Assembly (NCBI GenBank): GCA_965235115.1
Contig: OZ249441.1
Span: 7,998,001-8,062,000 of the forward strand
Origin: Laetmonice hystrix
Taxonomy: Eukaryota
DNA length: 64,000 bases
Direction of reading: 5' to 3'
Position numbers and translations under genes: made by a program. Numbering within the stretch: position 1 is the first letter of the stretch; the number at the start of each line of letters is the position of its first letter. The notes beneath the pieces are model-generated. The model searched no databases and had not been told where the DNA came from. It saw only the letters and a program-made list of their open reading frames with translations. Shown piece after piece: positions 2,464-31,106 of the stretch.

Positions 2464-5400
2464 ATGGCTGCGTGCACTAAAGAAGAGCAGTGGTACTACT
2501 ATGTAAGCGTGGGATTGATAACGTTTTTCGGTGGGCTGATTCTGTTGTTGCCGTGCCGTGTTATCTGGTACCTCTGCTGTAAGGAGCACGACGATGACCT
2601 CCAACCGGACGAGTACCACACCCGGAAGAGGACGGCGATGCGCAGTTGTTTCTCGCGCAGCCGAGCTGCTGCTGTCGCTATCATTTCCGGTCATAGTCCA
2701 GCGAGCAAGTTTATGGTAGGGATCTTTTTCCGGTCATGATGTAGGGATCTATGTGAATCTTATCAGATGTGAATCTTATGTGAATCTTATCTTCTTAACA
2801 GATCTGTACCACACTTTTTATACCTTATTCTAGTTTCATAAAGAATAAAAGATGGCGATGGATGCCTTCTCGGTACAATACCACAACTGTCACTCACTTA
2901 GGTGTTATACAATTCTCTCTGACAACATTTTGAGATAATAAAATAAAGGCAGTGTATATTTAGCCGGCATTTGGCGGGGTCATGTGACCATTAAAGCGAC
3001 GGTTTCGTCCTTCAGCATTGTGCGATAGGCGCCGGGCGATAGGCGATAGACTGTCGCTTTAATCTTCAAAATAAAACTAACCCTACAGGCTTGACCCGAA
3101 CCCTAACCCAAATAATTTAGATTCGATAATTAGTCAAACTAGGATAATCTTATTTAGCCGTTGCCGGCTAAATATACACTTTCTAAACGGCAACAAATTC
3201 ACGCCTAATGAGTGTGTTACATGCTGATGGTTTCATGTATACTAATACATGTTAGACCCCCATACTTATACTATGTTCTATGTCCGACTCCAGTTCACAC
3301 ATAACTATCGGATTCCAGGTGGTCATTGTTTTCCTCCTCAATATGACGGCTATCGGGGTCTATCTTATAGAAGTGTCGGAGTGAGTATACGATTTATTAT
3401 CCTACCTAGTTTTACCTTTGACATTATACGCCCACCCCCATTGGTCAAACCCAGGAGGGGGAGGGGCGTTACCCCTGACTGCCCTGTTGCACTGCTTGTT
3501 ACCGGTGTCCATGGGTGTGGACCTGTTACCAGTGTCACTGAGTGTGGCTAATAATAGTAGGCCTATACTGTAAATAATATTTGATGGCATTGTCTGCAGG
3601 TACACGGTGGATGACTGCGGTACCGTGAGAGACAACAATATACAACTTGTCTACATGTCCCTCTGTGCTCTATTCGCCATCCATTATGGAATCAGGGTAA
3701 GTGTATCCAAGAAAGTTAGCGAACTCTCATTCCTCCAGGCATTCTCAAGGAAATAACTACTGAACTCCAAGCCCAAGTCTCCTCCTAAAGTACCGTCCCT
3801 CAAGAGACAGCTTTCAACCAATCCAGCTACCCACCATTGACTTGTTGCATTATTTGTATTAACCATTGGATATATATCACACAGAACTAAAATTATCAGA
3901 ACAGATTATCTCCTAAACGTTTCAGTTTGTCGCGGCCACTGATAAGACGTACTTCTGGTTAGACGTCTACTCCATTGTGGATCATATGACGATTGGTCCT
4001 ACTTTCATGTCCCTGTATACGGACAGAAACTGGCTGGGTAAGTGTCCACCCACAGTCAGAACTTTATATTGGTCCCACTTTAGTGTCCCTGTATACGGAC
4101 AGAAACTGGCTGGGTAAGTGTTCACCCACAGTCAGAACTTTATATTGGTCCCACTTTAGTGTCCCTGTATACGGACAGAAACTGGCTGGGTAAGTGTTCA
4201 TCCCACAGTCAGAACTTTATATTGGTCCCACTTTGGTGTCCCTGTATACGGACAGAAACTGGCTGGGTAAGTGTTCATCCCACAGTCAGAACTTTATATT
4301 GGTCCCACTTTGGTGTCCCTGTATACGGACAGAAACTGGCTGGGTCTACCCACAGTCAGAACTTTATATTGGTCCCACTTTGGTGTCCCTGTATTCTTAC
4401 AGAAACTGGCTGGGTAAGTGTCCATCCCACAGTCAGAACTTTATATTGGTCCCACTTTGGTGTCCCTGTATACGGACAGAAACTGGCTGGGTAAGTGTCC
4501 ACCCACAGTCAGAACTTTATATTGGTCCCACTTTGGTGTCCCTGTATACGGACAGAAACTGGCTGGGTAAGTGTCCATCCCACAGTCAGAACTTTATATT
4601 GGTCCCACTTTAGTGTCCCTGTATACGGACAGAAACTGGATGGGTAAGTGTTCACCCACAGTCAGAACTTTATATTGGTCCCACTTTGGTGTCCCTGTAT
4701 ACAGGCAGAAACTGGCTGGGTAAGTGTCCACCCGCAGTCAGAACTTTATATTGGTCCCACTTTGGTGTCCCTGTATACGGACAGAAACTGGCTGGGTAAG
4801 TGTTCATCCCACAGTCAGAACTTTATATTGGTCCCACTTTGGTGTCCCTGTATACGAACAGAAACTGGCTGGGTAAGTGTCCACCCACAGTCAGAACTTT
4901 ATATTGGTCCCACTTTGATGTCCCTGTATACGGACAGAAACTGGCTGGGTAAGTGTCCATCCCCACAGTCAGAACTTTATATTGGTCCCACTTTGGTGTC
5001 CCTGTATACGGACAGAAACTGGCTGGGTAAGTCAGAACTTTATATTGGTCCCACTTTAGTGTCCCTGTATACGGACAGAAACTGGCTGGGTAAGTCAGAA
5101 CTTTATATTGGTCCCACTTTAGTGTCCCTGTATACGGACAGAAACTGGCTGGGTAAGTCAGAACTTTATATTGGTCCCACTTTAGTGTCCCTGTATACGG
5201 ACAGAAACTGGCAGTTCACCCCACAGTTAGAACCGTGTGTAGGTAAATAATACGTGTGTATCGGCGTACGTATATAATGTATGTAGCCTACAGGCCTTGA
5301 ATGTTGAATGGTAAGGCATTCAGACATGTTTGCGTGCCCCGTCCTACCTATAACTCTCTACCTATTGATATAAATACATGTATAAAACACACGTTCATGT

Positions 5401-8400
5401 TTACATAGATATAATATTAAAGTACATGTGTTTAATTATTACCGGCAGGTCTGAAGTTCCTCAGGCTCCTCTACCTCCTCCAGCTACCGGAGATCCTCCA
5501 GTTGGTACACATCATCAAGTCCTCCTCCAGGATCCGTCTTACCCAGATTGCCTCCATCTTCCTGGCCATCTGGATGTGTTCGGCTGGATTCGTTCACATA
5601 GTATGTATCTCCTTCCATCATCAGTATCCGATCATTATCAATGACCTTGACACAATTAATAAGACCCAAACCCGTCGTCCAGTTCCACTATTTATGTTTA
5701 TACCTAGCATGGCTCTGTTTATACCTAACATTCCTTTTTAACATTATCAAACACTTTTCTTTGGGGGACCATAAGCGCACTGAGAATTCGAGGTCGAGTA
5801 CCTCGGACCTATTCGGAGTACGGAATCGGCGTGGCTGAGTATGATTACAAATGCTCTGGGTTAACCAGACCCATTTTTTAACAGCCTATATATAGCCCTG
5901 CAATGCTCTGCGAGGTCTGAAGATGTTAAACAAATATTTGACAGTTCTTCTAAAACTGCACATATCAGCGTGCACTAATATTGTGTTTATCTTTCTCCAC
6001 CTCTCTCTGTCGCTGTGTGTGTCTCCCTTCGCCTCTCTTTCTCTCTCTCTCTCTCTCTCTCAATCGCTGTCTCGATCTCTCCTGAAACCACGACGGATTC
6101 CTGAGGATTCTGTCATGCGGTATGTTCCTAATGTAGTGCGAGAACAACGGTGACCCGTTCACAGATGACCCAGCCACCTCCCAGGAGCTCACCTACTGGA
6201 GGTGTATCTACTGGCTACTCATCACCATGTCAACTGTTGGCTTCGGTGACATCTCCCCCAACTCCGACTGCGGCCGCTTCTTCATCATTCTCTTCATTAT
6301 GGGAACCTTTGTAAGTACTTCACACAAGACCATCCATTGGTATTGACTTTGTCATAATTCCTCTTTTGCAGAGTGAAAATAACGGAGATCCATTTCACAA
6401 CTATGAAAACGCTCAACCTCTTGGCTACTGGGAAGCCATCTATTGGCTTCTGGTTACCATGTCGACGGTGGGGTTCGGGGAAATCACGCCCACCACGGAC
6501 GTCGGACGGGCGTTTATAATCATTTTCATCATGGGTACATTTGTGAGTTGTTTTAAGAATTTTGGGTGTGGTCGAGGAGCTGTTCTCACACAGCTGGGCA
6601 GCTAACCAAACGTCTTCATGTAGGCCTATTAATTCAAACTCGTAGCGGTCGTTAGCGGGTCACGGTAGTGGTCACCGTAGTGTGTAGAACCGCACTTGTC
6701 TGTCGTTAAGTGTGGTCAATTCACGTGTAGCTGTTTCCCTGCACTTGGCGGGAATTTTAGGTACACTGTATACGAAACGGAGGTTGCTGGGCACAAGGTT
6801 CCAGTATCTTCGCATCAACTGACACATTGAAACTTGACAGCAATTAAGTCTATCTGTAGTAGCCTATGACTGTTAGCAAGGACGTATATATGTAGTATGA
6901 CTGTTAGACTGACTGCGACTTGCTGTAATGTAGCCTATATTCCCACGTGCTGATTCCATCGCGTGGGACTAGCCGTAAAACGAAGTGACCCTAGGGTCCT
7001 GTTTCAGGATGAGCCTGGCGAGGACTTGGAAGTTACTTATGTTAAACAACACTTCTGCAATGATTCAAGCTGTTATCTTTTTGCTCAAGTGACGCCAAGA
7101 AACCGTGGTGTCCGCCAAAATGATATTGACACAGGGTATACACGTTCCTCCTGAAAGTGCTAAAAACGCGCGAAATCCAGGCGCGAATACGCTTAGTTAA
7201 TAATGGATTTACGCGGCGGCAGTTGTCGTTTAAAAATACAATGTATAGCCGTCCTTGATTCAATTCATGTGTCTGACAGTACACAAGGATACACAGACGG
7301 GTGCCTGGAGGCCGCGAATTTATTTTTCCCAAACAGGTTTGCCATTTACTAACTCTAAACCTCTTTGACAAATTTGGAGGGGAAAAACAACTAGATGTCG
7401 TCGACCAATCATGCGAGGTTATTGACGCCCTGAAGCGTCATGGCAAACCTGTTTGGGGAAACAATTCGCTGCCCGCGCGAGACCTCCGTCACTGTGCGCA
7501 GACATTTCCGTTTTGTCAACCAATGGGAGCACGGGACTGCGTCCCGATCGAGAACATCGTTATGTTACTTTCCAAAACATGTCGGGGAACTGGAACTAGG
7601 CCTGTGCTGACTGGCTCTCCTGTCATGCGTACTGGGAGTAAGAAGATACCATCATAAGCGTTTGTCTAACCTAATTGTGTGACCGCATAAAACGTCGGCA
7701 AGACTTTTACCGGCACCACAGGGGTTACACCTGACATTTTTCCGTTCAGATAATATTTGCCCAAATTATCCGACACAACCCCAATCTTACTGGCAGAATT
7801 CGCCTGGCTTACTTACCGATCGGTCCTTCCGTGGGGCCCTTGTATCCCTAGTGGTTCACTCATTGAAAGCCAAAGCCCCGATCCTCGACCGCTTGTATAG
7901 GCCGGGGTTTACACTGTTAACAGCACAGCTGACTATTTGTGAACTTGGTTGTGAGGTTTATAACTTGCATGCAGCTTTGGTGTCATGAAGTGTTACTTGT
8001 GCTATGTTCTGTCCAATATCGGTGTTTTGTTGATTGCTAGGTGTGGGGTTCTATGTCTTTACTTATCAAGAAATGTGCATGTATTACTCCAAATAAATGT
8101 AGTGTTCTAATTTACTGACGCCAGTGGTGGATCTAGGGGTTTATGGGGGTTAACCCCCCCCCTCTGCCACCAGTTTTCCCCCTATTTTTTCTTGTAAAAC
8201 CCTTTGGAACTAGATTTTATTTTATTTTATCATAGAGATTTCTTAGTTGACCAGATTGAGAGGATTTCTGCCTTGAAACCCTTGAAAAATCCTGGATCCG
8301 CCACTGTTAGTGTTTTCATCCTTACTGGTCTTTACAACGCTGTATCAATCTGAAGGAAAGGTTCACAGCCTTTTCTCCATCCGTATTTCAGGTTGGATAA

Positions 8401-11400
8401 AGTCTTTTCCAATACTAAGTCTTCATTTGCCGGATGCAAGGACGTAGTTAATCTCGGGATTAACCCAATCCGTGGATTTACGCAGATTCCCAGTTGCCAG
8501 AAAGTCAGGATTTTCTAGCCTTTTCTCATTCGTGGAGACTGCGCCTTATTTCGCTGGCCAAGCACAATAGAATTCAGTTAAACATGACTCAAACGTATTC
8601 AACCTTTCATCTATAGGCTAGATAGTAAGTTAAGTCATTCTTGGGATTATCCTCACAAAATGTTCTTGCATCCGGCCACATGTGGTTAAGAAGACAAACA
8701 TTTATACATTATTGAAGTGACTGAAGTATTGAGAGACAACTTGAGATCACTGTACCCGGTGTGAATATTATTGGTGATAGTTTGAATATTATTGGTGATA
8801 GTTTGAATATTATTGGTGATAGTTGGATATTATTGGTGATAATTTGAATATTATTGGTGATAGTTTGAATATTATTGGTGATAGTTTGAATATTATTGGT
8901 GATAGTTTGAATATTATTGGTGATAGTTGGATATTATTGGTGATAGTTTGAATATTATTGGTGATAGTTTGAACCATTGTTGTATACAGGCCATGTTTAC
9001 AAGTCTCATCCCCGAGCTGGCACGCCATCTCGGACACAGCACCAAGTATCACAAACCATACAAACGGGTCTACGGGAAGAGGTACCGTATAGACATGTAA
9101 CTCTGGTTTTGTCGGCCAGCCACTATTTACGACCCCCATCTACTCGTACCCTCCCCCCTTGATTCTGTATGGCCGACCGTATATCACCGTCTGACTGTGA
9201 CATAAGCCATGATTTAACATCCTGTCTCGACTCGAGCACAACTATAACCTAATATAGGACCATCATTCTGATTGTCTGGCCGTATTCAATACAGAACAGT
9301 TGCTATAGGCCTAACTTGATTTTAACTTGAATAGGCAACCCTTGTAGACGGCCCAATGTAAAGACACAATTCGCCCTGCTTGTTTCATTAACCTGTTTCC
9401 TTACCTATCTGACCAGACATATTATCGTTTGCGGACATATAACCTACGAATCGGTCTCCAATTTCATCCGCAATTTTATTCACGAGGACGCGGCCATTAC
9501 AAACGTTAATGTCGTCTTTGTGGACAAGTAAGTATATATGGTCCCGGCGTCATGCTGGTTCTCTTGACTCCACATGCTTACCACAGGCCATGAAATCATA
9601 TCATATGGCCATGAAATCATGTGTCATATTCCGGAATGAGACTCTGACTTGCTGTGCCCTTTGATCCAGACGATCTGGTCCCAGTATGTCGAAAATTCTC
9701 AACTTGAGTAAAGCTTAATTAAGTATACGTTACTCAAGTTGATAATTTTCGAGATACACATGTACTAGACACTGGTGTTTCACGCGCCTTACGTTTTTTC
9801 CGGTCGTGGAGAGAGGCCTCCATTATAGTGGTCATTATCTGAGCTCGGTTAACCCACCTGAAACAAAAAGCTGGGCCGAGCATAACGGATGTCTGATGGC
9901 AGAATTTTGAAATTTGGAAACTGGTGCCAGACCAAAATTATACTAGAGCCAAAGATGTTCGGTGTTCACCATTTGCACTTTTAATGACTCCGTTAGTTCT
10001 TTTGCATATGTGCACGTGTGTGCCCTACTACCAAAGATGAAAAGTTAATTGTGCATTTGCATTTGCATTTGATGCCATCTAGAGTCGTATCAAGGCAGTT
10101 TTACTCAAATGGTTGAATATTGAAATAAAGGCAATCTGGAATCTGTATTGTTGATGACATTATAACAACGTGTGGTGATCATCCTGACTGACGATTGGTA
10201 GGATTACATAGGATTTCATTTTTCATCTTGTCGCTGATGTAGTGAACTACTATTCTATATTATGATGTTATGTACAACATCCACCTGTAACACTTCCAGT
10301 ATAAAAACAAAATACGCGGTCTGTTAACTGGGAGATATGAGCAAAAAAAATTCTTGATGGACAATGTTTTATGGAATACTTCAGTCGAAAACCAGAGCTT
10401 GAATTGGAAGCTTTCTTTAAGCGTCACATGAACGATGTGACGTTTCTACAGGGAAGTGTTATGGATGTCACAACGTTGAAGAATGTCAAGGTGGGTGAAT
10501 ATTTAACCTGATCTCATATATCAAAGTTGTCCTTCTTGGGACACTTTTGATCGTTTAGCTCCCAATAACGGACTGCAAGTCATCATCGGTGGTTGTATTA
10601 TCAGGCCTTTTAGGAGGAAATAGTACTCCAGCGCTTTGGTAGATTTACGCGAGATGTTTAAAAATGCGACGGAGATCGCACTTTAGAGCAGAAAGTATTA
10701 TGACTTGTTGACTTGTAATGTTTGGTGAAGCAGGATTGTGACGTTATGCGTCCGTCGGTATGTTTTAGCTGCGGTACTGCGACGCGTGCCTCATCCTTGC
10801 CAACCGTTACTGTGACGACCCTGACGAGCAGGACTCGGCCAACATCATGAGGGCCACTTCCGTCAAGAATTACTACCCGCGGGTTCGGGTCATTATACAA
10901 CTCTTACAGCATCATAACAAGGTCAGTACGCAACCGTCGGTACTGACCCGCACAGAACGGGAACACTCGGGTAAAAAGGGGTTGGAGCTTGGTGAGTCGA
11001 TCAGTCTTGTTTAGATTGATTAATCAACTTTTATTATATCAGCTTGTCCGGCAAAAGTAAAGTTGGAATCCATGTACTGAACATATCGCAGACAACTTTA
11101 ATATCAAACGTTGTATTTCTCCAGGGACAGGCCTACCTCCTTCACAAACGTTGTATTTCCCCAGAGATAGGCCTACCTCCTTTACAAACGCTGTATTTCC
11201 CCAGGGATAGGCCTACCTCCTTCACAAACGTTGTATTTCCCCCGGGATAGGCCTACCTCCTTCACAAACGTATTTCCCCCGGGATAGGCCTACCTCCTTC
11301 ACAAACGTATTTCCCCAGGGATAGGCCTACCTCCTTCACAAACGTATTTCCCCCGGGATAGGCCTACCTCCTTCACAAACGTTGTATTTCCCCAGAGATA

Positions 11401-14400
11401 GGCCTACCTCCTTTACAAACGCTGTATTTCCCCCGGGATAGGCCTACCTCCTTCATAAACGTTGTATTTCCCCAGAGATAGGCCTACCTCCTTTACAAAC
11501 GCTGTATTTCCCCCGGGATAGGCCTACCTCCTTCACAAACGTTGTATTTCCCCAGGGATAGGCCTACCTCCTTCACAAACGTTGTATTTCCCCCGGGATA
11601 GGCCTACCTCCTTCACAAACGTTGTATTTCCCCAGGGATAGGCCTACCTCCTTTACAAACGCTGTATTTCCCCAGGGATAGGCCTACCTCCTTCACAAAC
11701 GTTGTATTTCCCCCGGGATAGGCCTACCTCCTTCACAAACGTATTTCCCCAGGGATAGGCCTACCTCCTTCACAAACGTTGTATTTCCCCAGGGATAGGC
11801 CTACCTCCTTCACAAACGTTGTATTTCCCCAGGGATAGGCCTACCTCCTTCACAAACGTTGTATTTCCCCAGGGATACCTCCTACACATACCAAACTGGA
11901 ACTGGGACAAGGTCAACGGCGATGACGTCATCTGTATATCAGAGATGAAGCTTGGCCTCTTGGCTCAGAATTGCCTAGCTCCAGGAGTATGTACACTGAT
12001 GGCTAACCTATTCACCATGAGATCCTTCAAGGTAGGCTCTATATCCCTAATTGATGTGCGTAAGCGACTCAAGCTTAGAGCTTGAGCAGTAATCTTCGAC
12101 TCAAGCTTAGGCAATCAGCGAGTATCTCTCATTTCAATGATTTCAAAATGCAGACATGGGATGTTAGGTTAGATAAGGTCTTAGACTACATAAATCAATA
12201 AATATATACCCGCAGAAATGGAGAAATCTAACGAAATTCAACATTCAAGATGCCTGACTTAAACAGCCAATGAAATTCATCGATGAACCGATGGCAAACG
12301 CCGGGAGAAAGCCTGGCACCGGCCGGGCTCCTACCTGCATTGATACCGGCCAGTACAAAATTCTTTTTTTTGCCTGTGGCAGTCAGTTAAACATCTTCAA
12401 CAATATTGCCTCAAATCTTCCACCTTCGAGCGCTCAATATCTTCTAACTTGAAAGTTTCTCCGTCGATCTTAAAATTCACTTCTGCCATCTTGCTTGCTT
12501 ATTCAGGCGTGCCAGCGGTGACCACGTGGGTTTGTTTGGGTTCCAAAACCCTAATCCCACAATGCACCGCGCGTGGCGAGATACCAAAATGGCTGATTGA
12601 TTTATGTTGTCTAAGGCCGTATGTAACCTAACGGCCCATGTCAGCATGTTGGAGTCATTGAAATAAGAGATACTCGCTGATTGCTATAATCTCCGACTTA
12701 ATATCCACCAATATCCGGGTCCAGGCCTTGCGACATTCACAGGCCTGGTAAAGCTTCGGCAGAGTGTGGGGTGTCTAGAGTTTAGCCTTTCGAGGCTTGC
12801 TTTTCAAAGGAGAGTTTAGCTTCACTAGTCATTTGAATGCATTTCCTTAAAAAATAATTCAAATCATGAAATGCTTAACTATATCCTCGATGTCACCCCA
12901 TTATATAATACATAAAGCATGTATTATTAATTTTCAGATAAGGAACACCCGGTTATGGCAAGACCTATATCGGTGTGTGGTAGGCAATGGTTAGATATTA
13001 TCATAGAAAATGTATGGTTTCAGATAGGAAACACCAGGTCGTGGCAGGATCTGTACCGGTACGGAGCAGGCAATGAAATCTACGCTGAGGAATTCGCGCC
13101 TGCCTTCGTTGGAATGACGTTCATCCAAGCAGCCGAGTAGGTCGAGTGCCAAGCGTCCCTTTTTTTGAAGAAATGGCAAAAGTTATTGGTAGGCTAGGCG
13201 TAAATGTTTTGAGAAACATCACAATTTCTATCTCCAGATGCCGGGAAACCTTCTAAATTCATTACGATTTCACGTTCTTAAATTGCCCGACCAATCATGC
13301 GATGGCTGCGCCGTCCCTGGCCCGTTGTCTACCGTGTGGGTAACTAAGGTCATCTTACGGTGAAAAGAAGGTTAAGCTATTGTAAAGTAAAAGGGACCTC
13401 TTGTCTATAGCGGGTCTCCACGGCGCATGCTTGTATACCCAAAGGTGACTCCACAGTCACCCTTGTCAAAGCAAGAACCCGACAAAGCTTGTCTAACATG
13501 ATACGGTGTATACCCCGGTGTAGGCTGCCACGGCTCGTCTGGCATGAAATCGTTGAAAGTCGTGTGTGGGAGGTCGTCTGTATATGAGAGGTTATCTATT
13601 TGGGAGGTCTGAGTTGAACGTCGGAGGTAATTAATTAGAAGGCTACCAAATGATATTGAACTTCTCATTGCGGCTCGGATACCAGTGAGAAACATGAACA
13701 AGAGTTCAATAACCGGGTTGGACCGTCCGACTGGCGGCGGACAGTCTATCGCTTGGTTGTCGGGCCTGTAATTTTTGGTCCGTTGCCGGCAGAACGGTCC
13801 GACGCGCTTATTGAAACATCCCCCAGGTCACCTCTCTCCGTGTGTCTCTCCCTCTCTGTCTCTGTCTGAGTGTCTCTCTCTGTCTCTGTTTGTCTGTCTG
13901 TCTCTCTCTCCCTCTCTCTCTCTGTCTGTCTCTCTATCTCTCTCTCAGCCTCACAAATATATATCTGTTTCCTGCAGTGTATTCTCTGTTTTACAGAATA
14001 TGTTTTACGGAGTTCAACGTTCTCCTGCTAGGAGTCGCTGGAGGAAAGAATACGCGATCGAAACTTCGCATCAATCCATTAAAAATGACTCTAGGAGTTC
14101 AAACTACAGGATTTTTCATTGCTCAATCTCCGTCACAGGTCAAAAGGTAAATCAGAAGTTATGTTACCCACGGTAAACTTTTCATGATTTCATCGCTATA
14201 GAGGGTAGCGTTGGGACATGGCCAGGAAGAGCGGTAGGTTTCTGTGTCTTGCCTTCAAACTTTGTTCCGATGTTATCGCTGGCATATTGCGAATAAACAC
14301 AATCTAAAGGGCCTGATCTACTGGCCCGGCCGGGTGGCCGTTTTAGGCATTTTACCGTTAGGATTGACCGTAAAATAAAAAATCACGAATACATGATTTT

Positions 14401-17083: not shown

Positions 17084-17125
<42 letters not shown>

Positions 17126-20100
17126 CACCCCTCGCTCTCTCTCTCTATCTCTCTCCTCTCGCTCTCTCTCTATCTCTCTCTATCTCTCTGCATGGACAAG
17201 TATGACACCAGGTTTCTCGCCAGCTCTACATGAGGGCATTACGCTTCTCGCCAGCTCTACATGAGGGCATTACGCTTCTCGCCAGCTCTACATGAGGGCA
17301 TTACGCTCTCCAGATGAAAATATCTCATTTAAACAGAACCCATCAGAATTTTAAGACTCACGGTTTAAAGTCTACATGAGGAACTTTTTTCTCTATGATA
17401 AGATACAATTATAATTTGTAATACATTATTGGCCGGATGTAAAGACGTCTAGTTAGTCTCGAGATTAACCCAATCCCTGGATTTACGTCTATTCCCAGTT
17501 GCCAGAAAATCAGAAATTTTCTAGTCTTTTCCCTTTTTTGGAGACTGACCTTATTTCGCTGGCCAAGCACAATAGAATTCAGTTAAACATGACTACCAAA
17601 CGAACCCAACCTTAAATCTCGGCTAGAAAGTTTAAGGAAAGTTAAGCCATTCCTGGGATTATATCACGGCCATATATCACTCTCTCCAAATGTGACTTCA
17701 TGGACCATTAGGATTTGGCGGTCTTCGAATCTAACTTAGGTGCCCATTGGTTACTAGGCTTATCTTACCTGCTGGTGAGAACCCTGAATGCTTATTGCTA
17801 AAGCTAACCCTCGTAAGACACTCACCTGCTACCTGACCTTTAACCTAACACTGCCGGCTTCTATTGCAGTATCACTACATCAGATGGCGAGCGGACGACG
17901 GTAATTATGTGCCACCTGGTGGCAAAAGTCGTAACTTTGTGGTGTCCGCGTCCCTTCGACCTTTGTGGCCTTGTTTATCTTTATTCTAATCCCGCATGTT
18001 TACAATAACCCATTCTTAATACAGAGGTATGTGTGACACATCTTTCTCACTGATAAACTCAACACTAATCGTTTGTTGTCTTCATTATTCTGATTTCGTT
18101 GTTGTTTTTTTTGTTGTTGGTTTTTTAAAGAAATGGTTGATAGCATGTGTTTTGGGGGTATTTTGTTATATTTATGAGTTCGTTTCGGACTGCCCTTTTG
18201 GAATCTGTTGAACAGATAATCTTCAAGCACAGAAATATTTAATACCATGAGATTTTACAATTGCATGGACATAACTGATTTACCTTGATGAGTAAAGTGC
18301 CGTAAGTCCATGATTGTAAGGTTATAGCAGGATCAAGAAGTCAATAGGGGCTTCCTAATGGCCACTGATGTCTCTGAGATTTGAATGATATCACGAATAC
18401 CAGTAATTTTCAGTCAAAACAAAATCAACCTTTTTATTGTTTCTAACTCCCATTGTGAAACAACAATCTGGTAAAACATACTGCCGGTCCGAGGCAGGCC
18501 CAGCTGTGTGACAAAGATCGACCATATATCATTCCCCTGCCTATTCTCATCAAAAGGCCCAAGAAGGGAGAGAAGAAACGGTTAGGTTCGACAGATAAGT
18601 TTGGCCGGTCGATGAGCGACGAGAGCTCGGAGGGGTACGACACGACAGGAACGTTTCACAGTCGGCCAGCCCGGAGACTGGACGACTGCGTGCTGGTAGG
18701 TCTTACTGTCCCAATCATCATGAACGTGCGCACGCTCTGGGTTTATGGGTCCACAGTGGGATCATTCGTGCAGGGATTACATTGTGCAAGGATGTAATAC
18801 CTGAAACAGTGGGGTGTTAATTCTGTCACTGGTAAGTTTCGATTCGCTGGAGATTTCTGCACCTGTCTTCCTCATGTGCAGCTGACATAAAGACATATAG
18901 AAAGTAGCCTCTCACATAGGCCGTGTGTACGGCCTATCGTCTAGCGAACGGGCTATGAGAACAAACGTTCAACCCGCAGAATAAATGTGCACCCGCACCT
19001 CTTCCATCACTTCAAATAAAAGATTGCCTTTACCTTCAACTACTGAGCCTAATGAACTTACTTGGTGTTCCTCTAAGCAACAGATTCGGCCCATTTTCCA
19101 AACCAAGCGACCACTTTCCATAGTCTTACAACCGGCGCCATTTTTTTAAACCCACATCCGGGGTCAATGTCACGAAGGGAGCAGTCATTTCAGACGTTGG
19201 CTATTAGTTTGGCGCCATAATGGAGGAATTGCTGTTTGGTCTAGAATGATGAATGCTCCCCTGCTGGTCGCCAGTGCGCATGTTTTGAACATGCGCAGTA
19301 GAACAAACAGTATGGCGGCTAACGGCAGTGAACCAGCGCGATTCGGAATTTCGAAAGTCTGATTTATTAAAACTTTGGGCAAAAATCCTCGGAAAAGTGT
19401 GCAGCAGAGGAACAGAAGATGGGCTGCGTTAGAATTGACACCTCAACTAGCAGTAGTTACGATGGATTTTGCACGAGTGATTAACATAGGAGGTAGGGTT
19501 TTTCGCGTTAGCGCCGTCCGTCCCTACTGGGACGATACTCCGTCTAATAGAAAGAAACATACACATCAAACGAGTAATGCCCGATTTCCACCGGACGCGA
19601 GCGAGCGATTTGTTTTGGCGCGCGCGTGCGCGTCAAAGGTAGAAATCGTTAAAGTGATTGCAGTAATTTCCACCCGGCGCGTGCGCCTAGCCAACTTCTT
19701 CTAGAGTGACCCTATTCCCTCGAGCAGAGGTCCGTTCGATTACCTGACCGACTTATGCCAGGGACCTATAGGTAGGGCTGGTCCAATTGGCTTGTGCGTC
19801 TCGTGGTATAATCGGGAACTAATTACCGAGTACGGAGGTACGTCAAAGTCAAAGCCATATGCTGGCTTACAACAATGAACCTTATTGGTTGACTGATTAG
19901 CAAGTATTAAAACTGTCCGCAGGTCGTCAGAAAAACATGCTCGCCTAGAGGTTAAAATTGAAGTTTAGGCGAGTAATTATTTGCTCGCCTGGCATTTTCA
20001 AAGGACAAGGCTCCATTGGTTAGGAGCCTAATGAATCGTTTCCCCTTAAAACCATATTATGACGAGGTTGAACCAAGCCCTGCATACTTTCCATACCACA

Positions 20101-23100
20101 GGACGTTGACGAAGTGGTCCGGAAAGATTTCAAGGGTCACGTGGTGCTATGTCTGCTGGCCGATCACAACTCTCCTCTCATAGGGCTCATTAACTTCATC
20201 ATGCCACTCCGGATGGCCAACATCCGGCGGGCTAACCTCAAGGACGTCGTCATCATGTCTGACCTTGGCTTCGTTATGAAGGAGTGGTCAGCCATCAACA
20301 CCTTTCCCGGCCTCTACGTCTTCCCGGTGAGTCCGCTGCCCCCTATCATAATTTGTTGGGGCATTATTTTATGTCACACTGGCCCAAAATGTCATGGCAA
20401 CTAGGGTGGCGTTTTTGTATCTTTACCGATGTCGTAAATCACTACACTGGCCTTGACGAGAGTTATCAAACATAGAGCGATGCCTCCATATTGAATTATC
20501 CGGTAGACGTTGATGTGTGACGTCATGAGTGTCACGAGTTCCGGTTTAACAGGGTAACCCCGCTCATCGGTCGGACCTGCGGGCACTGTCCCTGGAGAAG
20601 TGTTCCATGTGTGTCGTACTGTCCGCCAAGAAACACATCGTCGTCGACACGACCATGTTGGATAAGGAATCCATCCTCACTGCGCTCAACGTCAAGGGAA
20701 TGTTCAGTGACGACGTGGAGAAAAAAATTAAATCCATTGGCAGTACGTCGTCGCTTATGCAAAAAAAGAGTTTCGTTTCTTGTCCTTTCATATAAAAAAA
20801 TTGGTGTTGTGACGCGGTTTTTTTTCATCTTCTTTTTTTTTTGGATGCAACTAGACAACGGCCGATTCCTCGAATGCAATTGCTGTTGGGTACATGAAGA
20901 AGTCTTGATGAAAAGACTAAATGCACTGATGCTAAATGTTTTCATTAAAGAATGTGTAAAACTCACATAAAAAGCAATAAGACTAACAGAAAAACGCCAA
21001 CGCCAAAGAACCGTTGCTACGTTCTGTCACAGCGCTACACTGCCCACCATATAAAGCAGTCGGATTTGAAAAAAAAAACTTTACGCGGGTTTTTTTAGGT
21101 GACGCGCGCGGGGACAAGAAACGAATCCATTTTTTTGCCTTACGATTGAATGAAATTAGTCAAATACCGCTAAAAACTATAGCTTCGGCCAATATTAATA
21201 CAGAGAACACTTGGGGGGGGACTAGTCTTACTAGAGTAGTCGAACATCTTTGGGCCAATGCCCTCAACACCAGAAAATTTTAAACGTGAACGACCATAAC
21301 TTGCCATTCCTGATCTACTGTGCTGTTATTTTCCAGTCCTAGACAATTATCAAAACTTTCAGCAACACCTGGAATCCATGAAGGACATTCCACTGACGGT
21401 GGATCTCGGTAGGTAAAAACATCGCTGCTTCTGGCGTACTTCTTAGATTATTTTGTTAATCATTTGATTGTAATTACGATGTATTTACCTTGACATGATT
21501 TACTTTTAAATTAACTGTATTTCGTGTCATATCGATGGTGATAATCGTTCGGCCGTCATTATTAAGTAGGCCTACATACCGTTATTGTCGTGGTCACGTG
21601 ACTTGTTGTGACGTCACAGAGTTTGACGAGAACGTAGCGTTCCTAGACCAGGATGACGACGACGATCCGGAAGTTCCTCTCTATATGACTCAGCCGTACG
21701 CCAGCGGTAGCACGTTTGCCGCGAGCTCACTCGACTCCTTACTCAGTGCCGTCAGTAGCATTCCTTCATTCCTACCATGAACCCAAATAAAAAATGACCA
21801 CCCCTTACCATTTTAGTCTTTCTGGGTAATTCTTCTTACCTATGCACGTTTACGAGGACACAGAGGTGGTCTTTGAGTGTTAGACCGACATGTACATTTG
21901 TAAGATTAAATGTAGACACGCCACCCCTATAACATTATGCACGGCAATTGTTCCTGGTATAGTGCCTAATTAATCTTTTTATTGCCCCGTACCAGAGGAC
22001 TCTATGTTTGTGGTTCTGATTGGACCTTTTTATTGACCCGTACCAGAGGACTCTATGTTTGTGGTTCTGATTCGACCTTTTTATTGACCCGTACCAGACG
22101 TACCAGAGCAGTCAGATACTGACCGTTGTGAGGGCACTAACCACGGGTGGAGAGACGGCTGAGATCGAACAGATCCTCTCGGAGGCCCTCGGCATTGTCC
22201 GGAAGATGCCCGAGTCGGGCGCCCGCCGTGACCAATCACATTTATCCCTCCTATCCCTCGACGAATGCCCCCTGGCCAGTCTAAAGGTAACTAGAGGCAG
22301 GCTCTGTCGCCACCCTCCGTTTTAAGATGTTTACCAGCTTCGTAATAGTTCGTCTACAACGCTTATCTACGGTGGCCGATTAGTGCCAACGACGAATACA
22401 AATTCAAAACGACGAATACAAAAGCAAAACGACAAATACAAAAGCAAAACGACAAATACAAATTCAAAACGACGAATACAAAAGCAAAACGACAAATACA
22501 AAAGCAAAAACGACAAATACAAATTCAAAACGAAGAATACAAATTCAAAACGACAAATACAAAAGCAAAAACGATGAATACAAATCCCTCTCACACCACA
22601 AACAACAACTTGGCGTGAAGCACGTTTACAAAAAGGATATCCATGTTCCGGGCCGAGAGTCGACCAGGACGAGTCTAAGTGTAAATGTGGGACAGGGGTG
22701 AGCTGAGGTGATATCTACCGAGGCCTGCTATGGAATACCTGAAGGGAAATTCTTCGACTTCCAGCTCGACCTACATACATTTACTGAGACACCGACCATA
22801 ACTTCGACTTCGACTTCGACGTAAACTTCGACTTCGAGTTGGGAGGCACATTCTCAAACTCGTTCCAAAGGCAACCTTTTTAGCGTGTTTGGGCTTTGGC
22901 GTGGCTCCTCCGTCCATGCAGTGGCGGATCCAACGGGCCAGGCGCGGATTTAGGGGGGTCATTGTCGGGGGGGGGGAGAGGGCGGGGGCGTTGCCGGGAC
23001 GGGGCGGGGGCACCGGGCGGGGGCACCGACCCCCGCACCGGTGTGACTAATTACCGAAATCTACCGAAATCTACCGGAATTCAGAAACCCCATGACTAAT

Positions 23101-24979
23101 TACCGAAATCGACCCCCAAACTTACCGAAATGGACCTCTAGTTGTGTTTGGGAGCCCCCAAACTTTCCGAAATGGACCTCTAGTTGTGTTTGGGACCCCC
23201 AAACTTCCGAAATCGACCTCTAGTTGTGTTTGGGAGTCCCCAAACTTACGGAAATCGACCCACTCTAATTGGGTTTGGGAGCCCCCAAACTTACCGAAAT
23301 CGACCTCTAATTGGGTTTGGGAGCCCCCGAACTTACCGAAATCTGGGGGCTCACAAACACAACTAGAGGTCGATTTCGGTAAGTTTGGGGGCTCCTATAA
23401 ACCCAATTAGTGGTCGATTTCAGTAAGTTTGGGGGCTCTCAAACACAACTAGAGGTCGATTTCGGTAATTTTGGGGGTCGATTTCGGTAATTAGTCATGG
23501 GGTTTCTGGATTTCGGTATATTCCGGTAGATTTCGGTATATTCCGGTAGATTTCGGTAATTAGTCACACCCGTAGACAGTTTCCGCCCTAGTAGGAATTG
23601 GAACGAGTTGCGCATGTCCGAGACTTTGGCTCCCTTATGCCAATCTCCTACCGCAGCGTCTCAGTATCGCCAGAACTAGTCAGAGTGCAAACACCCCTGT
23701 CCACTTAAACTCGCCCTGGTCGTCCCTGGGCCCCGAACATGGATACCATTCTTGTAAGCGTGCTACACGCCAACTTGTTGTTCGCGTTTGTGATCTCTCT
23801 CTTGCATTTGCGTGTTTGATTTTGTTTTCGCGGTTTTTGTTTTGTAATTGCCGTTTTGGCGTTTGCGTTTTCTCTTTTGTTTTTGCGTTTTTGAATTTGT
23901 GGTCGTGGTTTCTGTTTTGTAATCGCCGTTCTAACTTTTGCGTTTGTGTTTTCTCTTTTGCATTCGTCGTTTTTAATTTGTAAACGTGTTTTCTCTTTTG
24001 CATTCGTCGTTTTTAATTTGTAAACGTGTTTCCTCTTTTGTAATCGTCGTTGGCACTAACCGGCCACCGTACTTATCAGCTCATTACCACAAGCAATGTA
24101 GGGGGATACTCACTGTAAAAGGTTGGTCGGCTGTAGTAATCTAATATCAGAATGAATATGGTATCTATGCTACTTCAGCATAATATAATTAGCATGTAGG
24201 GCCTATATTCTTTCTGTATTTTGGCTACTACAGTCAGCCGCGTAATCCTTGTTCAACGTCATGATTTACAAAGATCAATGACTCTAAAATATCTGCTCAT
24301 TCAAATAGCTCTTTTCTTCTATACCTGTATTTTGATTTGTGTCCTACCTGCGGTACAGATGGACAACCTGTACCGGTCGCTGTTTGTGAAGGCACTCCGG
24401 CAGTATGGTATCCTCGTCCTGGGTCTCTACCGCCTCATGGACCCTCACAGCATACATTCACGCGCCAAAAAACGTTACGTCATTACCAACCCGCCGATAG
24501 ACTTCGAGGTCCTGCCGTCAGACAAGGTGAACCGGCGGAAAATGAGGTGTAACCTCAACGCTATCAGTTATTATCAATTATAAGGAGATGGCGCTTCTAT
24601 AGGCGTCAGCCGATCCGAGTGTTATCTGATAGATTAACAGCGTCATCTTAGGACGGTATCAAACTTTGTGGAAGATGAAGCTAAAGTATAAGCTAAGATT
24701 GAGTAGGAAAGTAAGTAGGCCTTTTCAATCATTTTGCAGGTCTACTGTCTGCAGCCATACCCGCCGGAGGAGGATATGACGTCAGTAAAACAAGCCAATG
24801 GGAGCCTACAAGACTCGTCCAATCGGCAGCCGCCGCCGTATGAGTCGACATCAGACAGTTCGTCACGTGATGACCTTGAACCAATCCCTGCTGGCACGAC
24901 AGGCAAAGTGTTCGTCTCGCGCGGACGGCACACGCCATCTGCCGACGAAAACGCGAACCTCAGCGTCTCCAAGCTCTAG
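2464..24979 (+). CDS. KCNMA1-like: Divergent Slo1/BK-family Ca2+-activated potassium channel alpha subunit, about 1094 aa, spliced
   Basis: Exons with consistent phases: 2464-2715 (S0, [20 protein letters not shown]), 3319-3380, 3600-3696, 3926-4037, 5449-5600 (S4-S5, [17 protein letters not shown]), 6137-6310 or 6372-6542 (pore), 8990-9081, 9417-9527 (HIIVCGHIT), 10385-10490, 10769-10921 ([15 protein letters not shown]), 11873-12031, 13024-13136, 13997-14146, 15129-15214, 15882-15993, 18557-18695, 20102-20326 (GHVVLC..MPLR), 20553-20742, 21337-21408, 21620-21750 (calcium bowl [10 protein letters not shown]), 22098-22286, 24359-24526 (KRYVITNPP), 24740-24979 (stop). Motif order and intron positions match Slo1. 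The three linker exons between 15129 and 18695 are less certain because they rest on phase and splice signals. The ATG directly follows an AG acceptor, implying an upstream exon. Confidence 0.95.
2951..3180. mobile_element. MITE-like element, 230 bp
   Basis: 19-bp perfect terminal inverted repeat AGTGTATATTTAGCCGGCA ... TGCCGGCTAAATATACACT; no clear target-site duplication. Confidence 0.6.
4038..5212 (+). repeat. Minisatellite of about 76 bp (later about 63 bp), roughly 16 copies, built from the 3' end of Slo exon 4 plus its donor site
   Basis: Unit gtaagtgt(t/c)ca(c/t)ccacagtcagaactttatattggtcccactttggtgtccctgtatacggacagaaactggctgg; the last 46 nt or so match the end of exon 4. Confidence 0.95.
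6035..6062. repeat. (CT)n microsatellite
   Basis: Direct reading; similar CT-rich tracts at about 13830-13950, 17085-17190 and 40820-40893. Confidence 0.85.
6137..6310 (+). CDS. Slo-like pore exon, copy A (turret, pore helix, filter TVGFGD, start of S6)
   Basis: atgtag|TGCGAG...ACCTTT|gtaagt; 174 nt, phase 0-0; [58 protein letters not shown]. Confidence 0.92.
6372..6542 (+). CDS. Slo-like pore exon, copy B (filter TVGFGE)
   Basis: ttttgcag|AGTGAA...ACATTT|gtgagt; 171 nt, phase 0-0; [57 protein letters not shown]; open frame and intact splice sites. Confidence 0.9.
8122..8306. mobile_element. Short MITE-like element
   Basis: Inverted ends CAGTGGTGGATCT ... GGATCCGCCACTG; the same CAGTGGCGGATCC end recurs at about 22920. 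Confidence 0.6.
8429..8676. mobile_element. MITE-like dispersed repeat, copy 1
   Basis: Inverted ends GCCGGATGCAAGGAC ... GTTCTTGCATCCGGC; the internal sequence recurs at 17431-17677. Confidence 0.7.
8763..8973. repeat. 21-bp minisatellite, about 10 copies, ending just before the exon 7 acceptor
   Basis: Unit gaatattattggtgatagttt. Confidence 0.92.
11107..11872 (+). repeat. Minisatellite of 38-41 bp, about 19 copies, built from the acceptor and first codons of Slo exon 11
   Basis: Unit ttgtatttcccc(a/c)gggataggcctacctccttcacaaacg; the true junction is ttgtatttccccag|GGATACCTCCTACAC. Confidence 0.93.
12110..12685. mobile_element. MITE-like element, Kolobok-type termini, longer copy
   Basis: About 30-bp inverted ends GCAATCAGCGAGTATCTCTCATTTCAATGA ... 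TCATTGAAATAAGAGATACTCGCTGATTGC; related to 37433-37666. Confidence 0.65.
12938..12994 (+). pseudogene. Partial tandem duplicate of the acceptor and first third of Slo exon 12
   Basis: ttttcag|ATAAGGAACACCCGGTTATGGCAAGACCTATATCGGTGTGTGGTAGGCAATGGTTAG reads [18 protein letters not shown] against the true exon [18 protein letters not shown]; it aligns without gaps and ends in a stop. Confidence 0.7.
14308..14491. mobile_element. PIF/Harbinger-like MITE
   Basis: TAA|aGGGCCTGATC ... GATCAGGCCCg|TAA: inverted ends with a TAA duplication on both sides. Confidence 0.6.
15390..15861. repeat. 32-bp minisatellite, becoming a 63-bp dimer at the 3' end, ending about 20 bp before the exon 15 acceptor
   Basis: Unit gatgagaacccttgctgccatagtaactgttt. 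Confidence 0.92.
17214..17307. repeat. 31-bp tandem repeat, 3 copies
   Basis: Unit cttctcgccagctctacatgagggcattacg. Confidence 0.85.
17431..17677. mobile_element. MITE-like dispersed repeat, copy 2 (right end degraded)
   Basis: Clear similarity to 8429-8650, including the shared ccttatttcgctggccaagcacaatagaattcagttaaacatgact. Confidence 0.65.
21976..22097 (+). repeat. About 52-bp tandem duplication that includes copies of the exon 21 acceptor
   Basis: ttttattg(a/c)cccgtaccag occurs three times; the last is the acceptor used. Confidence 0.85.
22370..24069. mobile_element. 1.7-kb non-autonomous DNA transposon flanked by TA, with inverted subterminal A-rich arrays and nested inserts
   Basis: TA|CGGTGGCCGATTAGTGCCAACGACGA ... 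TCGTCGTTGGCACTAACCGGCCACCG|TA; A-rich array 22385-22580 mirrored by T-rich array at about 23780-24050; no transposase ORF. Confidence 0.8.
23040..23570. mobile_element. Nested foldback/palindromic element, about 530 bp
   Basis: GGTGTGACTAATTACCGAAATCTACCG ... CGGTAGATTTCGGTAATTAGTCACACC, with internal tandem units mirrored on the right arm. Confidence 0.75.
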
Positions 24980-30900: not shown

Positions 30901-31106
30901 ATGTGGCGAATCGTCCACCTACCGTGGCACCACCTAGCGATGAAGAGAACTATTTTGCCGCCAGGGACTGTCTTCCAGTAGAGGGCTCTCGGATAGCAGT
31001 CAGGACTTGGCCGAGGCCGCCTCGGGCGCCAATAACATGGAATATACCACCTGCCGTTTTACAGTCAGGCGGGGCTTGTGGATTTGAGATGCGCTCTTCA
31101 ATGTGA
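27976..31106 (+). CDS. Type I single-pass membrane protein: signal peptide, SUEL/Gal-lectin-like domain, S/T/P-rich stalk, TM helix, Tyr-motif cytoplasmic tail (about 730 aa)
   Basis: Exons 27976-28042 (MVSILTGILTIAMVHSYPRGRE), 28341-28646 (HAC..ITLTC..LYGSNPRGVC..C..C..C..TSYVKIIYTC), 28903-29931 (contains the 330-aa ORF, donor CTGA|gtaagg), 30086-30170 (VLVATGEAVIILVLVVSLGFNCIV), 30401-31106 (RQRRE juxtamembrane, in frame with ORF 30567-31106). Phases 1,1,1,2 all join in one frame. Confidence 0.78.

What the first reader, a model, noticed from the sequence alone, without database searches (positions are those of the whole stretch)
3600..10490. BK-type channel with a disarmed voltage sensor and no Mg2+ site but intact Ca2+ sensors
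Seen in sequence: S2 reads [19 protein letters not shown] and S4 reads [15 protein letters not shown]. Counting from the conserved R167 and GL.FLR anchors, both the D153 and R213 equivalents are Tyr, while R167 and D186 are kept. The four interdomain Mg2+ ligand positions read A (D99), T (N172), N (E374) and T (E399). D367, M513-R514, E535 and the calcium bowl DQDDDDDP are conserved. Established: D153, R167, D186 and R213 carry most BK gating charge; D99, N172, E374 and E399 form the Mg2+ site, which acts through R213. Inference: the interacting partners have been lost together, giving a Slo1-architecture channel (S0 plus calcium bowl) that is Ca2+-gated and largely voltage-independent. That combination is unlike Slo1, Slo2 or Slo3.
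Basis: partly seen in the sequence, partly recalled or inferred. Interest (0 to 1): 0.75.

Follow-up and report, generated by a model that had tools for sequence, protein, structure and literature searches.

The report
BK-like channel with tyrosine-swapped voltage sensor
This animal gene encodes a calcium-activated potassium channel of the BK (Slo1) type in which two key voltage-sensor charges are replaced by tyrosines, a change kept in distant relatives, so it is a natural experiment on how BK channels sense voltage.

Summary
A multi-exon Slo-family gene lies on the + strand at about 2464-24979. The first 13 exons all have GT-AG borders and matching phases. It encodes S0-S6, two RCK domains and a calcium bowl.

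Alignment to solved human BK chains places Tyr at R213, Thr at N172, Asn at E374 and Thr at E399. It also shows D367, M513-R514, E535 and the bowl aspartates kept. A multiple alignment places Tyr at D153 and Ala at D99.

The gene is neither canonical Slo1 nor Slo3. The same genome has a separate canonical Slo1, a second Slo1-like gene and a Slo2-like gene. Two environmental contigs carry orthologues. One has the same intron positions and both tyrosines. Synonymous sites are saturated and dN is 0.28, so the tyrosines are selected features of an old clade.

- R210, now regarded as a gating charge alongside R213, is kept.
- D153 is a tuning residue that pairs with R207/R210, not with R213.
- Loss of R213 and of the Mg2+ ligands recurs in other invertebrate Slo1-like proteins.

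The unusual part is Tyr at 153 combined with fully kept Ca2+ sites. Weaker voltage sensing and no Mg2+ activation are likely, but near voltage-independence is unproven. No RNA data were found.

The parts
2464..2715 (+). Exon 1: start codon, S0 helix and S0-S1 linker. The D99 equivalent is Ala (codon 2665-2667).
   Evidence: AG before and GT after. S0 aligns to S0 of the Tubulanus Slo1-like protein P0030 and of the orthologue L020 (58% identity).
3319..3380 (+). Exon 2: S1 helix ([20 protein letters not shown]). It ends in phase 2.
   Evidence: Read from sequence, with canonical sites. L020 has an exon with the same borders and phase.
3600..3696 (+). Exon 3: S1-S2 loop and S2. Tyr replaces D153 (codon 3652-3654). 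F160 and R167 are kept.
   Evidence: L020 also has Tyr here.
3926..4037 (+). Exon 4: S2-S3 loop and S3. N172->Thr (codon 3938-3940). E180->Asp (charge kept) and D186 kept.
   Evidence: Alignment to solved BK chains, residues 168-205.
3992..5212 (+). Tandem repeat. About 14 copies of 76 bp plus 4 copies of 63 bp, each repeating the last 46 bases of exon 4, its GTAAGT donor and the start of the intron.
   Evidence: Tandem Repeats Finder. Repeated DRNWLG frames with a donor after each.
5449..5600 (+). Exon 5: S4, S4-S5 linker and S5. R207->Lys, R210 kept, R213->Tyr (codon 5472-5474), E219 kept.
   Evidence: Alignment to human BK 206-255. Orthologues P0151/L017 and L020 keep FLRLLYLLQ. Read-derived DNA contigs agree.
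6137..6310 (+). Exon 6a: pore helix and filter TVGFGD. It is the more diverged of two tandem pore exons, both phase 0-0.
   Evidence: Pfam Ion_trans_2. 32 of 57-58 residues match the L020 pore exon.
6372..6542 (+). Exon 6b: pore helix and filter TVGFGE. It resembles the single pore exon (TVGYGE) of orthologue L020.
   Evidence: 70% identity to the L020 pore exon.
8990..9081 (+). Exon 7: C-terminal part of S6 and the linker to RCK1. In the inner-pore acidic ring E321 is kept and E324->Arg.
9417..9527 (+). Exon 8: start of RCK1. D362->Asn, D367 kept, E374->Asn (codon 9508-9510).
   Evidence: Alignment to human BK 344-378. Pfam Slo-like_RCK.
10385..10490 (+). Exon 9: RCK1. Q397->Asp and E399->Thr (codon 10440-10442).
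   Evidence: Alignment to human BK 383-414.
10769..10921 (+). Exon 10: RCK1.
   Evidence: Pfam Slo-like_RCK, with canonical sites.
11873..12031 (+). Exon 11: RCK1 and BK_channel_a. M513-R514 are kept.
13024..13136 (+). Exon 12: RCK1, E535 kept. A 58-nt partial copy of its acceptor and 5' end lies at 12932-12989.
13997..14146 (+). Exon 13: end of RCK1 ([12 protein letters not shown]).
18557..18695 (+). Linker exon ending in YDTTGTFH...DDCVL. The 5' border is uncertain. Acceptors at 18494 or 18557 would join in frame to exon 13.
   Evidence: No RNA support is available.
20102..20326 (+). RCK2 first exon.
20553..20749 (+). RCK2 exon. The 3' border is uncertain (20701, 20746 or 20749).
21570..21750 (+). 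RCK2 calcium-bowl exon. DQDDDDDP lies at 21646-21669. The 5' border is uncertain (21567 or 21570).
22098..22286 (+). RCK2 / Slowpoke_C exon.
24359..24526 (+). Slowpoke_C exon.
24740..24979 (+). Last exon and stop codon.

Best explanation
The gene is an intact, selectively maintained member of an old Slo1-derived side branch of BK-type potassium channels. It is built like Slo1, with S0-S6, a K+ pore and a gating ring of two RCK domains.

Both high-affinity Ca2+ sites are complete (D367/M513/R514/E535 and the calcium bowl), so intracellular Ca2+ is most likely its main activator.

The voltage sensor is not degenerate. The D133 and E180 positions stay acidic (Glu and Asp), position 207 stays basic (Lys), and F160, R167, D186, R210 and E219 are unchanged. 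Two positions, D153 and R213, are both Tyr, and this is conserved across species. By analogy with mutant BK channels, loss of R213 should remove about half of the sensor's gating charge. Loss of R213 and of D153 should each bias the sensor towards rest.

The expected result is a shallower voltage dependence and an activation range governed mainly by Ca2+. The interdomain Mg2+ site is absent (A/T/N/T), and so is its electrostatic target R213, so millimolar Mg2+ should not activate the channel.

Shown here: gene structure, residue identities, paralogy and conservation. Inferred: all gating behaviour.
For: - Gene model: 13 N-terminal exons have GT-AG borders and consistent phases.
- Pfam: Ion_trans_2, Slo-like_RCK (three exons), BK_channel_a and Slowpoke_C all score above their cut-offs.
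- Residue mapping to solved BK chains and a 14-sequence site table.
- Paralogy: the same genome has a canonical Slo1 with D153/R207/R210/R213/E374/E399 and a bowl, plus a second Slo1-like and a Slo2-like locus.
- Orthologues: L020 (JAAUYG010203113.1) has the same exon borders, Tyr at 153 and at 213, Ala at D99 and Ser at N172. P0151/L017 has Tyr213.
- Selection: dN is 0.28 with dS saturated over 211 codons.
- Tree: ours and L020 form a 100/100 clade on a stem of 0.6 changes per site.
- Literature: R213Q lowers zQ and shifts V0 to +394 mV, and D153N biases the sensor to rest (PMC9231616). The Mg2+ site is D99/N172/E374/E399 and acts through R213 (PMC5677106).
Against: - No RNA runs were found. 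Expression, the choice of pore exon and the linker exons are unverified.
- R210 and Lys207 remain, so substantial voltage sensing could persist.
- Tyr is not a simple neutralisation, and compensating changes elsewhere could restore the set-point.
- S4 is among the most conserved segments between orthologues (66-72%), which argues that it still does something important.
- The E324->Arg change and the GFGD/GFGE filters mean that pore properties may also differ from BK.
- The D99 assignment rests on a weakly conserved linker.
Confidence: 0.6

Rival explanations
1. The channel is still a true voltage- and Ca2+-activated BK-type channel. R210, with Lys207, carries enough charge. The two tyrosines only retune the set-point or the kinetics of the sensor, for example through hydrogen bonds or cation-pi contacts with R210 in the charge-transfer region.
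For: - R210, F160, R167, D186 and E219 are all kept, and the E180 position stays acidic (Asp).
- R210 is one of the two measured gating charges (PMC9231616).
- S4 is strongly conserved between orthologues (FLRLLYLLQ is invariant in three species), as expected for a working sensor or gating lever.
Against: - In human BK, R213Q lowers zQ and moves V0 to +394 mV, and D153N also favours rest (PMC9231616).
- Both substitutions point the same way, with no obvious compensating new charge in S1-S4.
Confidence: 0.3
2. The protein is mainly a modulatory subunit. It co-assembles with the canonical Slo1 of the same animal and alters the voltage and Mg2+ sensitivity of the heteromers, and is not a stand-alone channel.
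For: - Three Slo1-like genes coexist in one genome.
- The pore, S6 and gating-ring interfaces remain Slo1-like, at 44-50% identity to canonical Slo1.
Against: - Nothing here tests assembly.
- All parts needed for a homotetramer are present.
- No expression data exist to show co-expression.
Confidence: 0.08
3. The locus is a decaying duplicate or an assembly artefact. On this view the tyrosines are neutral drift, and the internal duplications (exon-4 donor repeats, two pore exons, a partial exon-12 copy) are signs of breakdown.
For: - There are three local duplications of exon parts.
- No RNA evidence was found.
- The linker exons are unresolved.
Against: - Every identified exon is open and has canonical splice sites and phases.
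- Both tyrosines and the exon borders are conserved in an orthologue with saturated synonymous divergence and dN of 0.28.
- Read-derived contigs reproduce the S4 exon and both pore exons.
Confidence: 0.04

Closest known systems
Canonical Slo1 / BK (KCNMA1; solved structures of human 6V22, Aplysia 5TJ6, Drosophila 7PXE)
   Same: - S0-S6 layout, pore, two RCK domains, the RCK1 Ca2+ site and the calcium bowl.
- F160, R167, D186, R210 and E219 are unchanged, and the E180 position stays acidic (Asp).
- 44-50% identity to canonical Slo1 proteins over the conserved parts.
- Solved BK chains are the best matches for every conserved exon tested except S2.
   Different: - Tyr at D153 and at R213, and Lys at R207.
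- All four Mg2+ ligands are replaced.
- Filter GFGD or GFGE in place of GYGD.
- E324->Arg in the inner acidic ring.
- It forms a separate clade, and a canonical Slo1 sits elsewhere in the same genome.
Slo3 (KCNU1), the vertebrate sperm channel
   Same: - A Slo1-derived paralogue with S0 and a GFG filter.
- An 'LP' motif in the S4-S5 linker.
- E399 is replaced by Thr or Ser.
   Different: - Slo3 keeps D153 and R213 but lacks the calcium bowl and the RCK1 Ca2+ site (PMC5337896 uses bowl absence as a criterion for Slo3).
- This gene shows the reverse pattern.
- The tree gives Slo3 its own 100/100 clade.
Other divergent invertebrate Slo1-like proteins: Tubulanus XP_074641051.1 (P0030), Owenia CAH1784201.1 (P0043), tapeworm BK (P0153, P0176), and unnamed ENA proteins P0064 and P0146
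   Same: - S0 plus a gating ring.
- R210, R167 and D186 are kept.
- R213 is replaced by G, I, T, S or W.
- The Mg2+ ligands are mostly replaced.
   Different: - All of them keep an acidic residue at 153.
- Several have lost R514 or M513, or parts of the bowl.
- None groups with this gene in the tree.
Slo2 (KCNT1/2)
   Same: Slo family, with a gating ring of two RCK domains and weak intrinsic voltage sensing.
   Different: - Slo2 has no S0, an uncharged S4 and no calcium bowl (textbook knowledge, not tested here).
- The genome has a separate, distant Slo2-like locus on contig C8.

Membership tests
Slo family (Slo1-type BK alpha subunit) | K+ pore with a TVGxG filter between S5 and S6 | tested here: met
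   TVGFGD (exon 6a) and TVGFGE (exon 6b). Pfam Ion_trans_2 scores 49.6 and 51.0 bits against a cut-off of 22.5.
Slo family (Slo1-type BK alpha subunit) | An extra N-terminal S0 helix before S1-S4 | tested here: met
   Exon 1 encodes [20 protein letters not shown]. It aligns to S0 of P0030 and of L020. This is by sequence only, with no topology test.
Slo family (Slo1-type BK alpha subunit) | Cytosolic gating ring: two RCK domains, BK_channel_a and Slowpoke_C | tested here: met
   PF22614 on three exons, PF03493 at 54.3 bits and PF21014 at 66.2 bits, all above their cut-offs.
Slo family (Slo1-type BK alpha subunit) | Calcium bowl (D892, D895, D897) | tested here: met
   DQDDDDDP aligns to human chain residues 892-899.
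Slo family (Slo1-type BK alpha subunit) | RCK1 Ca2+ site (D367, M513, R514, E535) | tested here: met
Slo family (Slo1-type BK alpha subunit) | S4 gating charges R210 and R213 | tested here: not met
   R210 is kept and R213 is Tyr. The same holds in two orthologues.
Slo family (Slo1-type BK alpha subunit) | Interdomain Mg2+ site (D99, N172, E374, E399) | tested here: not met
   The four positions read A, T, N and T. This site is also incomplete in most invertebrate Slo1-like rows, so it is a weak criterion.
Slo family (Slo1-type BK alpha subunit) | Orthology to canonical Slo1 (KCNMA1/slowpoke) | tested here: not met
   A canonical Slo1 lies at G000:C1:14.83-14.88 Mb. In the tree this gene and L020 form their own 100/100 clade.
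Slo family (Slo1-type BK alpha subunit) | Large conductance, and activation by Ca2+ and voltage | not testable with these tools
   This needs electrophysiology.
Slo3 (KCNU1) | No calcium bowl and no RCK1 Ca2+ site, with placement inside the vertebrate Slo3 clade | tested here: not met
   The bowl and the RCK1 site are intact. The Slo3 rows form a separate 100/100 clade.
Slo2 (KCNT) | No S0, an uncharged S4 and no calcium bowl | tested here: not met
   S0, Lys207, R210 and the bowl are present. A separate Slo2-like locus lies on C8.

The most novel reading that the evidence does not exclude
An uncharacterised, evolutionarily old clade of BK-type channels carries a conserved Tyr153/Tyr213 pair in place of an acidic tuning residue and the primary S4 gating charge. 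Both Ca2+ sites stay intact. Such a channel would be gated essentially by Ca2+ alone over the physiological voltage range, despite Slo1 architecture. It would be a natural counterpart of the R213 and D153 neutralisation mutants. The residual S4, which is strictly conserved, would then serve as a structural gating lever and not as a sensor.
Probability: 0.3. Interest if true: 0.7.

Novelty: new variant of a known kind. Interest (0 to 1): 0.5.

Why it matters
BK channels are the textbook case of dual gating by voltage and Ca2+, and which residues carry the gating charge has been argued over for two decades.

This is a naturally selected channel in which R213 and D153 are both Tyr while R210, the charge-transfer Phe and both Ca2+ sites are kept. 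It offers a ready-made test of the 'R210 plus R213' model and of how much the sensor contributes to Ca2+ gating.

The site table also shows that R213 and the Mg2+ ligands have been lost repeatedly in invertebrate Slo1-like proteins, including the BK channels of tapeworms. Vertebrate-style voltage and Mg2+ regulation is therefore not a universal property of the family.

Tried and rejected
**Searches that found little or nothing**
- The full-library search with the 75-aa RCK2 exon found no relative above about 57% identity. The best full-length hits are Slo1, Slo3 or other divergent paralogues.
- A profile made of a full-length scaffold plus the window's exons (A1) was badly aligned and recovered only the scaffold, so that search was wasted.
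- A search for fragments of the calcium-bowl exon found no candidates. Bowl conservation in the orthologues is therefore untested.
- A metagenome scan with the S2 open frame found nothing. The scan with the S4-S5 alignment found L020.
- The S2 exon alone has no hit among solved structures.

**Expression and read data**
- No RNA-seq run holds the locus. Read laying could therefore only confirm the DNA.

**Steps not possible**
- Structure prediction, and homologue searches with the whole protein, were not done. The spliced protein has no reference and long sequences may not be typed.
- The RCK1-RCK2 linker could not be resolved. No AFFYC-type exon was found, and in-frame direct joins exist.
- The organism could not be named because ids are coded.

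**Readings rejected**
- Slo3 orthology is rejected: the bowl is present and the gene falls in a separate clade.
- A pseudogene is rejected: the frames are open and the orthologue is conserved.
- 'D153 and R213 are interacting partners lost together' is rejected: published simulations pair D153 with R207/R210.


Full report
**What is there**

The window is animal DNA with short exons and GT-AG introns. A Slo-family gene lies on the + strand from the ATG at 2464 to the stop at 24979.

I rebuilt the N-terminal half exon by exon:
- 2464-2715: S0
- 3319-3380: S1
- 3600-3696: S2
- 3926-4037: S3
- 5449-5600: S4 to S5
- 6137-6310 or 6372-6542: pore
- 8990-9081: S6
- 9417-9527, 10385-10490, 10769-10921, 11873-12031, 13024-13136 and 13997-14146: RCK1

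Every border is AG...GT, and the phases join into one open frame of 577 residues.

The RCK2 exons are at ...18695, 20102-20326, 20553-about 20749, about 21570-21750, 22098-22286, 24359-24526 and 24740-24979. The RCK1-RCK2 linker is not resolved, but in-frame joins from 14146 to 18494 or 18557 exist.

Pfam assigns the exons to Ion_trans_2, Slo-like_RCK, BK_channel_a and Slowpoke_C, all above their cut-offs.

Exons were aligned to solved BK chains. In the ungapped stretches chain index equals residue number (for example 6v22_A).

| Human BK position | Residue in this gene | Basis |
|---|---|---|
| R207 | Lys | |
| R210 | Arg, kept | |
| R213 | Tyr | |
| E219 | Glu, kept | |
| N172 | Thr | |
| D186 | Asp, kept | |
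| D367 | Asp, kept | |
| E374 | Asn | |
| D362 | Asn | |
| E399 | Thr | |
| M513-R514 | kept | |
| E535 | kept | |
| Bowl D892/D895/D897 | kept | |

The S2 exon is too diverged to hit a solved chain alone. In multiple alignments it is ungapped from the conserved loop Cys to R167. The D153 column then reads Tyr here and Asp or Glu in every other Slo1/Slo3-like row. D99 aligns to Ala in the poorly conserved S0-S1 linker.

**What kind of gene it is**

The genome (627 Mb, 35 contigs) has four loci with BK_channel_a:
- **G000:C1 at about 14.85 Mb.** A canonical Slo1 with D153, R207/R210/R213, E374, E399 and the bowl.
- **C6 at about 14.2 Mb.** A second Slo1-like gene that keeps the sensor charges but has Lys at E374 and Val at E399.
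- **C8.** A distant Slo2-like gene.
- **This gene**, on C6 at about 8.0 Mb.

This gene is 44-50% identical to canonical Slo1 proteins and 32-39% identical to Slo3 and to other divergent paralogues. It is not a known fish-type Slo3, because those lack the poly-Asp bowl (PMC5337896).

**Orthologues**

A fragment search with the S4-S5 exon found one protein, P0151. It comes from an ENA metagenome contig (L017), is 70% identical, and carries [15 protein letters not shown].

A metagenome scan built on that pair found L020 (JAAUYG010203113.1, 4952 bp). L020 carries S0, S1, S2, S3, S4-S5, one pore exon and S6, with the same splice positions and phases as here. It has:
- Tyr at the D153 position (IQIVYIGLC...IIR)
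- Tyr at R213
- Ala at D99
- Ser at N172
- a TVGYGE filter

Over 211 aligned codons the proteins are 61% identical. dN is 0.28 and synonymous sites are saturated.

In maximum-likelihood trees this gene and L020 form a 100/100 clade on a stem of about 0.6 changes per site. Its relation to canonical Slo1, the second paralogue, the Owenia protein and Slo3 is an unresolved polytomy.

The two tyrosines are therefore conserved characters of an old clade and not drift. Whether the clade is confined to one phylum cannot be told from this sampling.

**How unusual it is**

The site table compares 14 sequences.
- R167, D186 and R210 are universal.
- R213 is replaced in the nemertean (Gly) and annelid (Ile) paralogues, in two tapeworm BK proteins (Thr, Ser) and in two unnamed ENA proteins (Trp).
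- The Mg2+ ligands are incomplete in nearly all invertebrate rows. An otherwise canonical Slo1 (P0169) has Ser at N172 and Lys at E399.
- Only this clade has a non-acidic residue at 153.
- Unlike most of the divergent paralogues, and unlike Slo3, it keeps every Ca2+ ligand.

**Mechanism**

Direct gating-current measurements (PMC9231616) later found that only R210Q and R213Q lower the charge per sensor. The same study reports:
- R213Q moves V0 to +394 mV.
- D153N, like D133 and R167 neutralisations, biases the sensor towards rest without changing the charge.
- In simulations D153 pairs with R207 at rest and with R210 when active.
- R213 contacts D186 and F160.

Mg2+ bound at D99/N172/E374/E399 activates BK through R213 (PMC5677106).

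Applied to this protein, one of the two gating charges is gone and both substitutions would favour the resting sensor. The Mg2+ site and its target are both absent. F160, R167, D186, R210 and E219 are unchanged, position 207 stays basic (Lys), the E180 position stays acidic (Asp), and S4 is strictly conserved.

The most likely outcome is a channel driven mainly by Ca2+, with a shallow voltage dependence and no Mg2+ activation. A 'disarmed' sensor and near voltage-independence go beyond the evidence. All of this paragraph is inference.

**Limits**

- No RNA run holds the locus.
- DNA contigs from one sample, probably the one that was assembled, confirm the S4 exon and both pore exons on one contig.
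- The whole spliced protein could not be submitted to the homologue or structure tools because it has no reference.

**Other features**

- Two tandem pore exons have equal phase. Exon 6b is the ancestral-looking one.
- A 76-bp tandem array repeats the exon-4 donor about 17 times.
- A partial copy of the exon-12 start lies 86 bp upstream of it.
- E324 in the inner acidic ring is Arg.

Noticed in passing
window 6137-6310 and 6372-6542: Two tandem pore exons have the same phase (0-0) and canonical splice sites. They encode the filters TVGFGD (6a) and TVGFGE (6b). Orthologue L020 has a single pore exon (TVGYGE) that is 70% identical to 6b and about 55% to 6a, so 6a looks like the derived copy. Both lie on single read-derived contigs. 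Whether they are mutually exclusive is unknown because no RNA was found.
   Followed up: partly
window 3992-5212: A tandem array of about 14 copies of 76 bp and 4 copies of 63 bp repeats the last 46 bases of exon 4, its GTAAGT donor and the first intron bases. About 17 potential donor sites therefore follow the true one.
   Followed up: partly
window 12932-12989: A 58-nt partial duplicate (76% identity) of the acceptor and 5' end of exon 12 lies 86 bp upstream of the real exon start at 13024.
   Followed up: partly
window 8990-9081: The inner-pore acidic ring of BK keeps E321 but has Arg at the E324 position (Thr in L020). From my own knowledge of BK mutagenesis, this ring contributes to the large conductance, so the unitary conductance may be smaller than in BK.
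   Followed up: no
G000:C1:14837543-14878065 (L007-L011): The canonical Slo1 of this genome also has a GFG filter (TVGFGD) in the pore exon found, and Pro at the N172 position. GFG is therefore not special to the gene under study.
   Followed up: partly
P0153, P0176 (tapeworm BK), P0030 (Tubulanus), P0043 (Owenia): R213 is replaced by Thr, Ser, Gly or Ile in annotated BK or BK-like proteins of other invertebrates, while R210 is universal in the sample. Loss of the main S4 charge appears to be recurrent in the family.
   Followed up: partly
window 28872-31103: Two long open frames on the + strand (358 and 242 aa) lie downstream of the channel gene. They are rich in Ser, Pro, Thr and Arg. They were not analysed.
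   Followed up: no
window 8464-8613 and 17469-17612: Two introns of the gene hold similar open frames ([26 protein letters not shown]), probably copies of an interspersed repeat.
   Followed up: no
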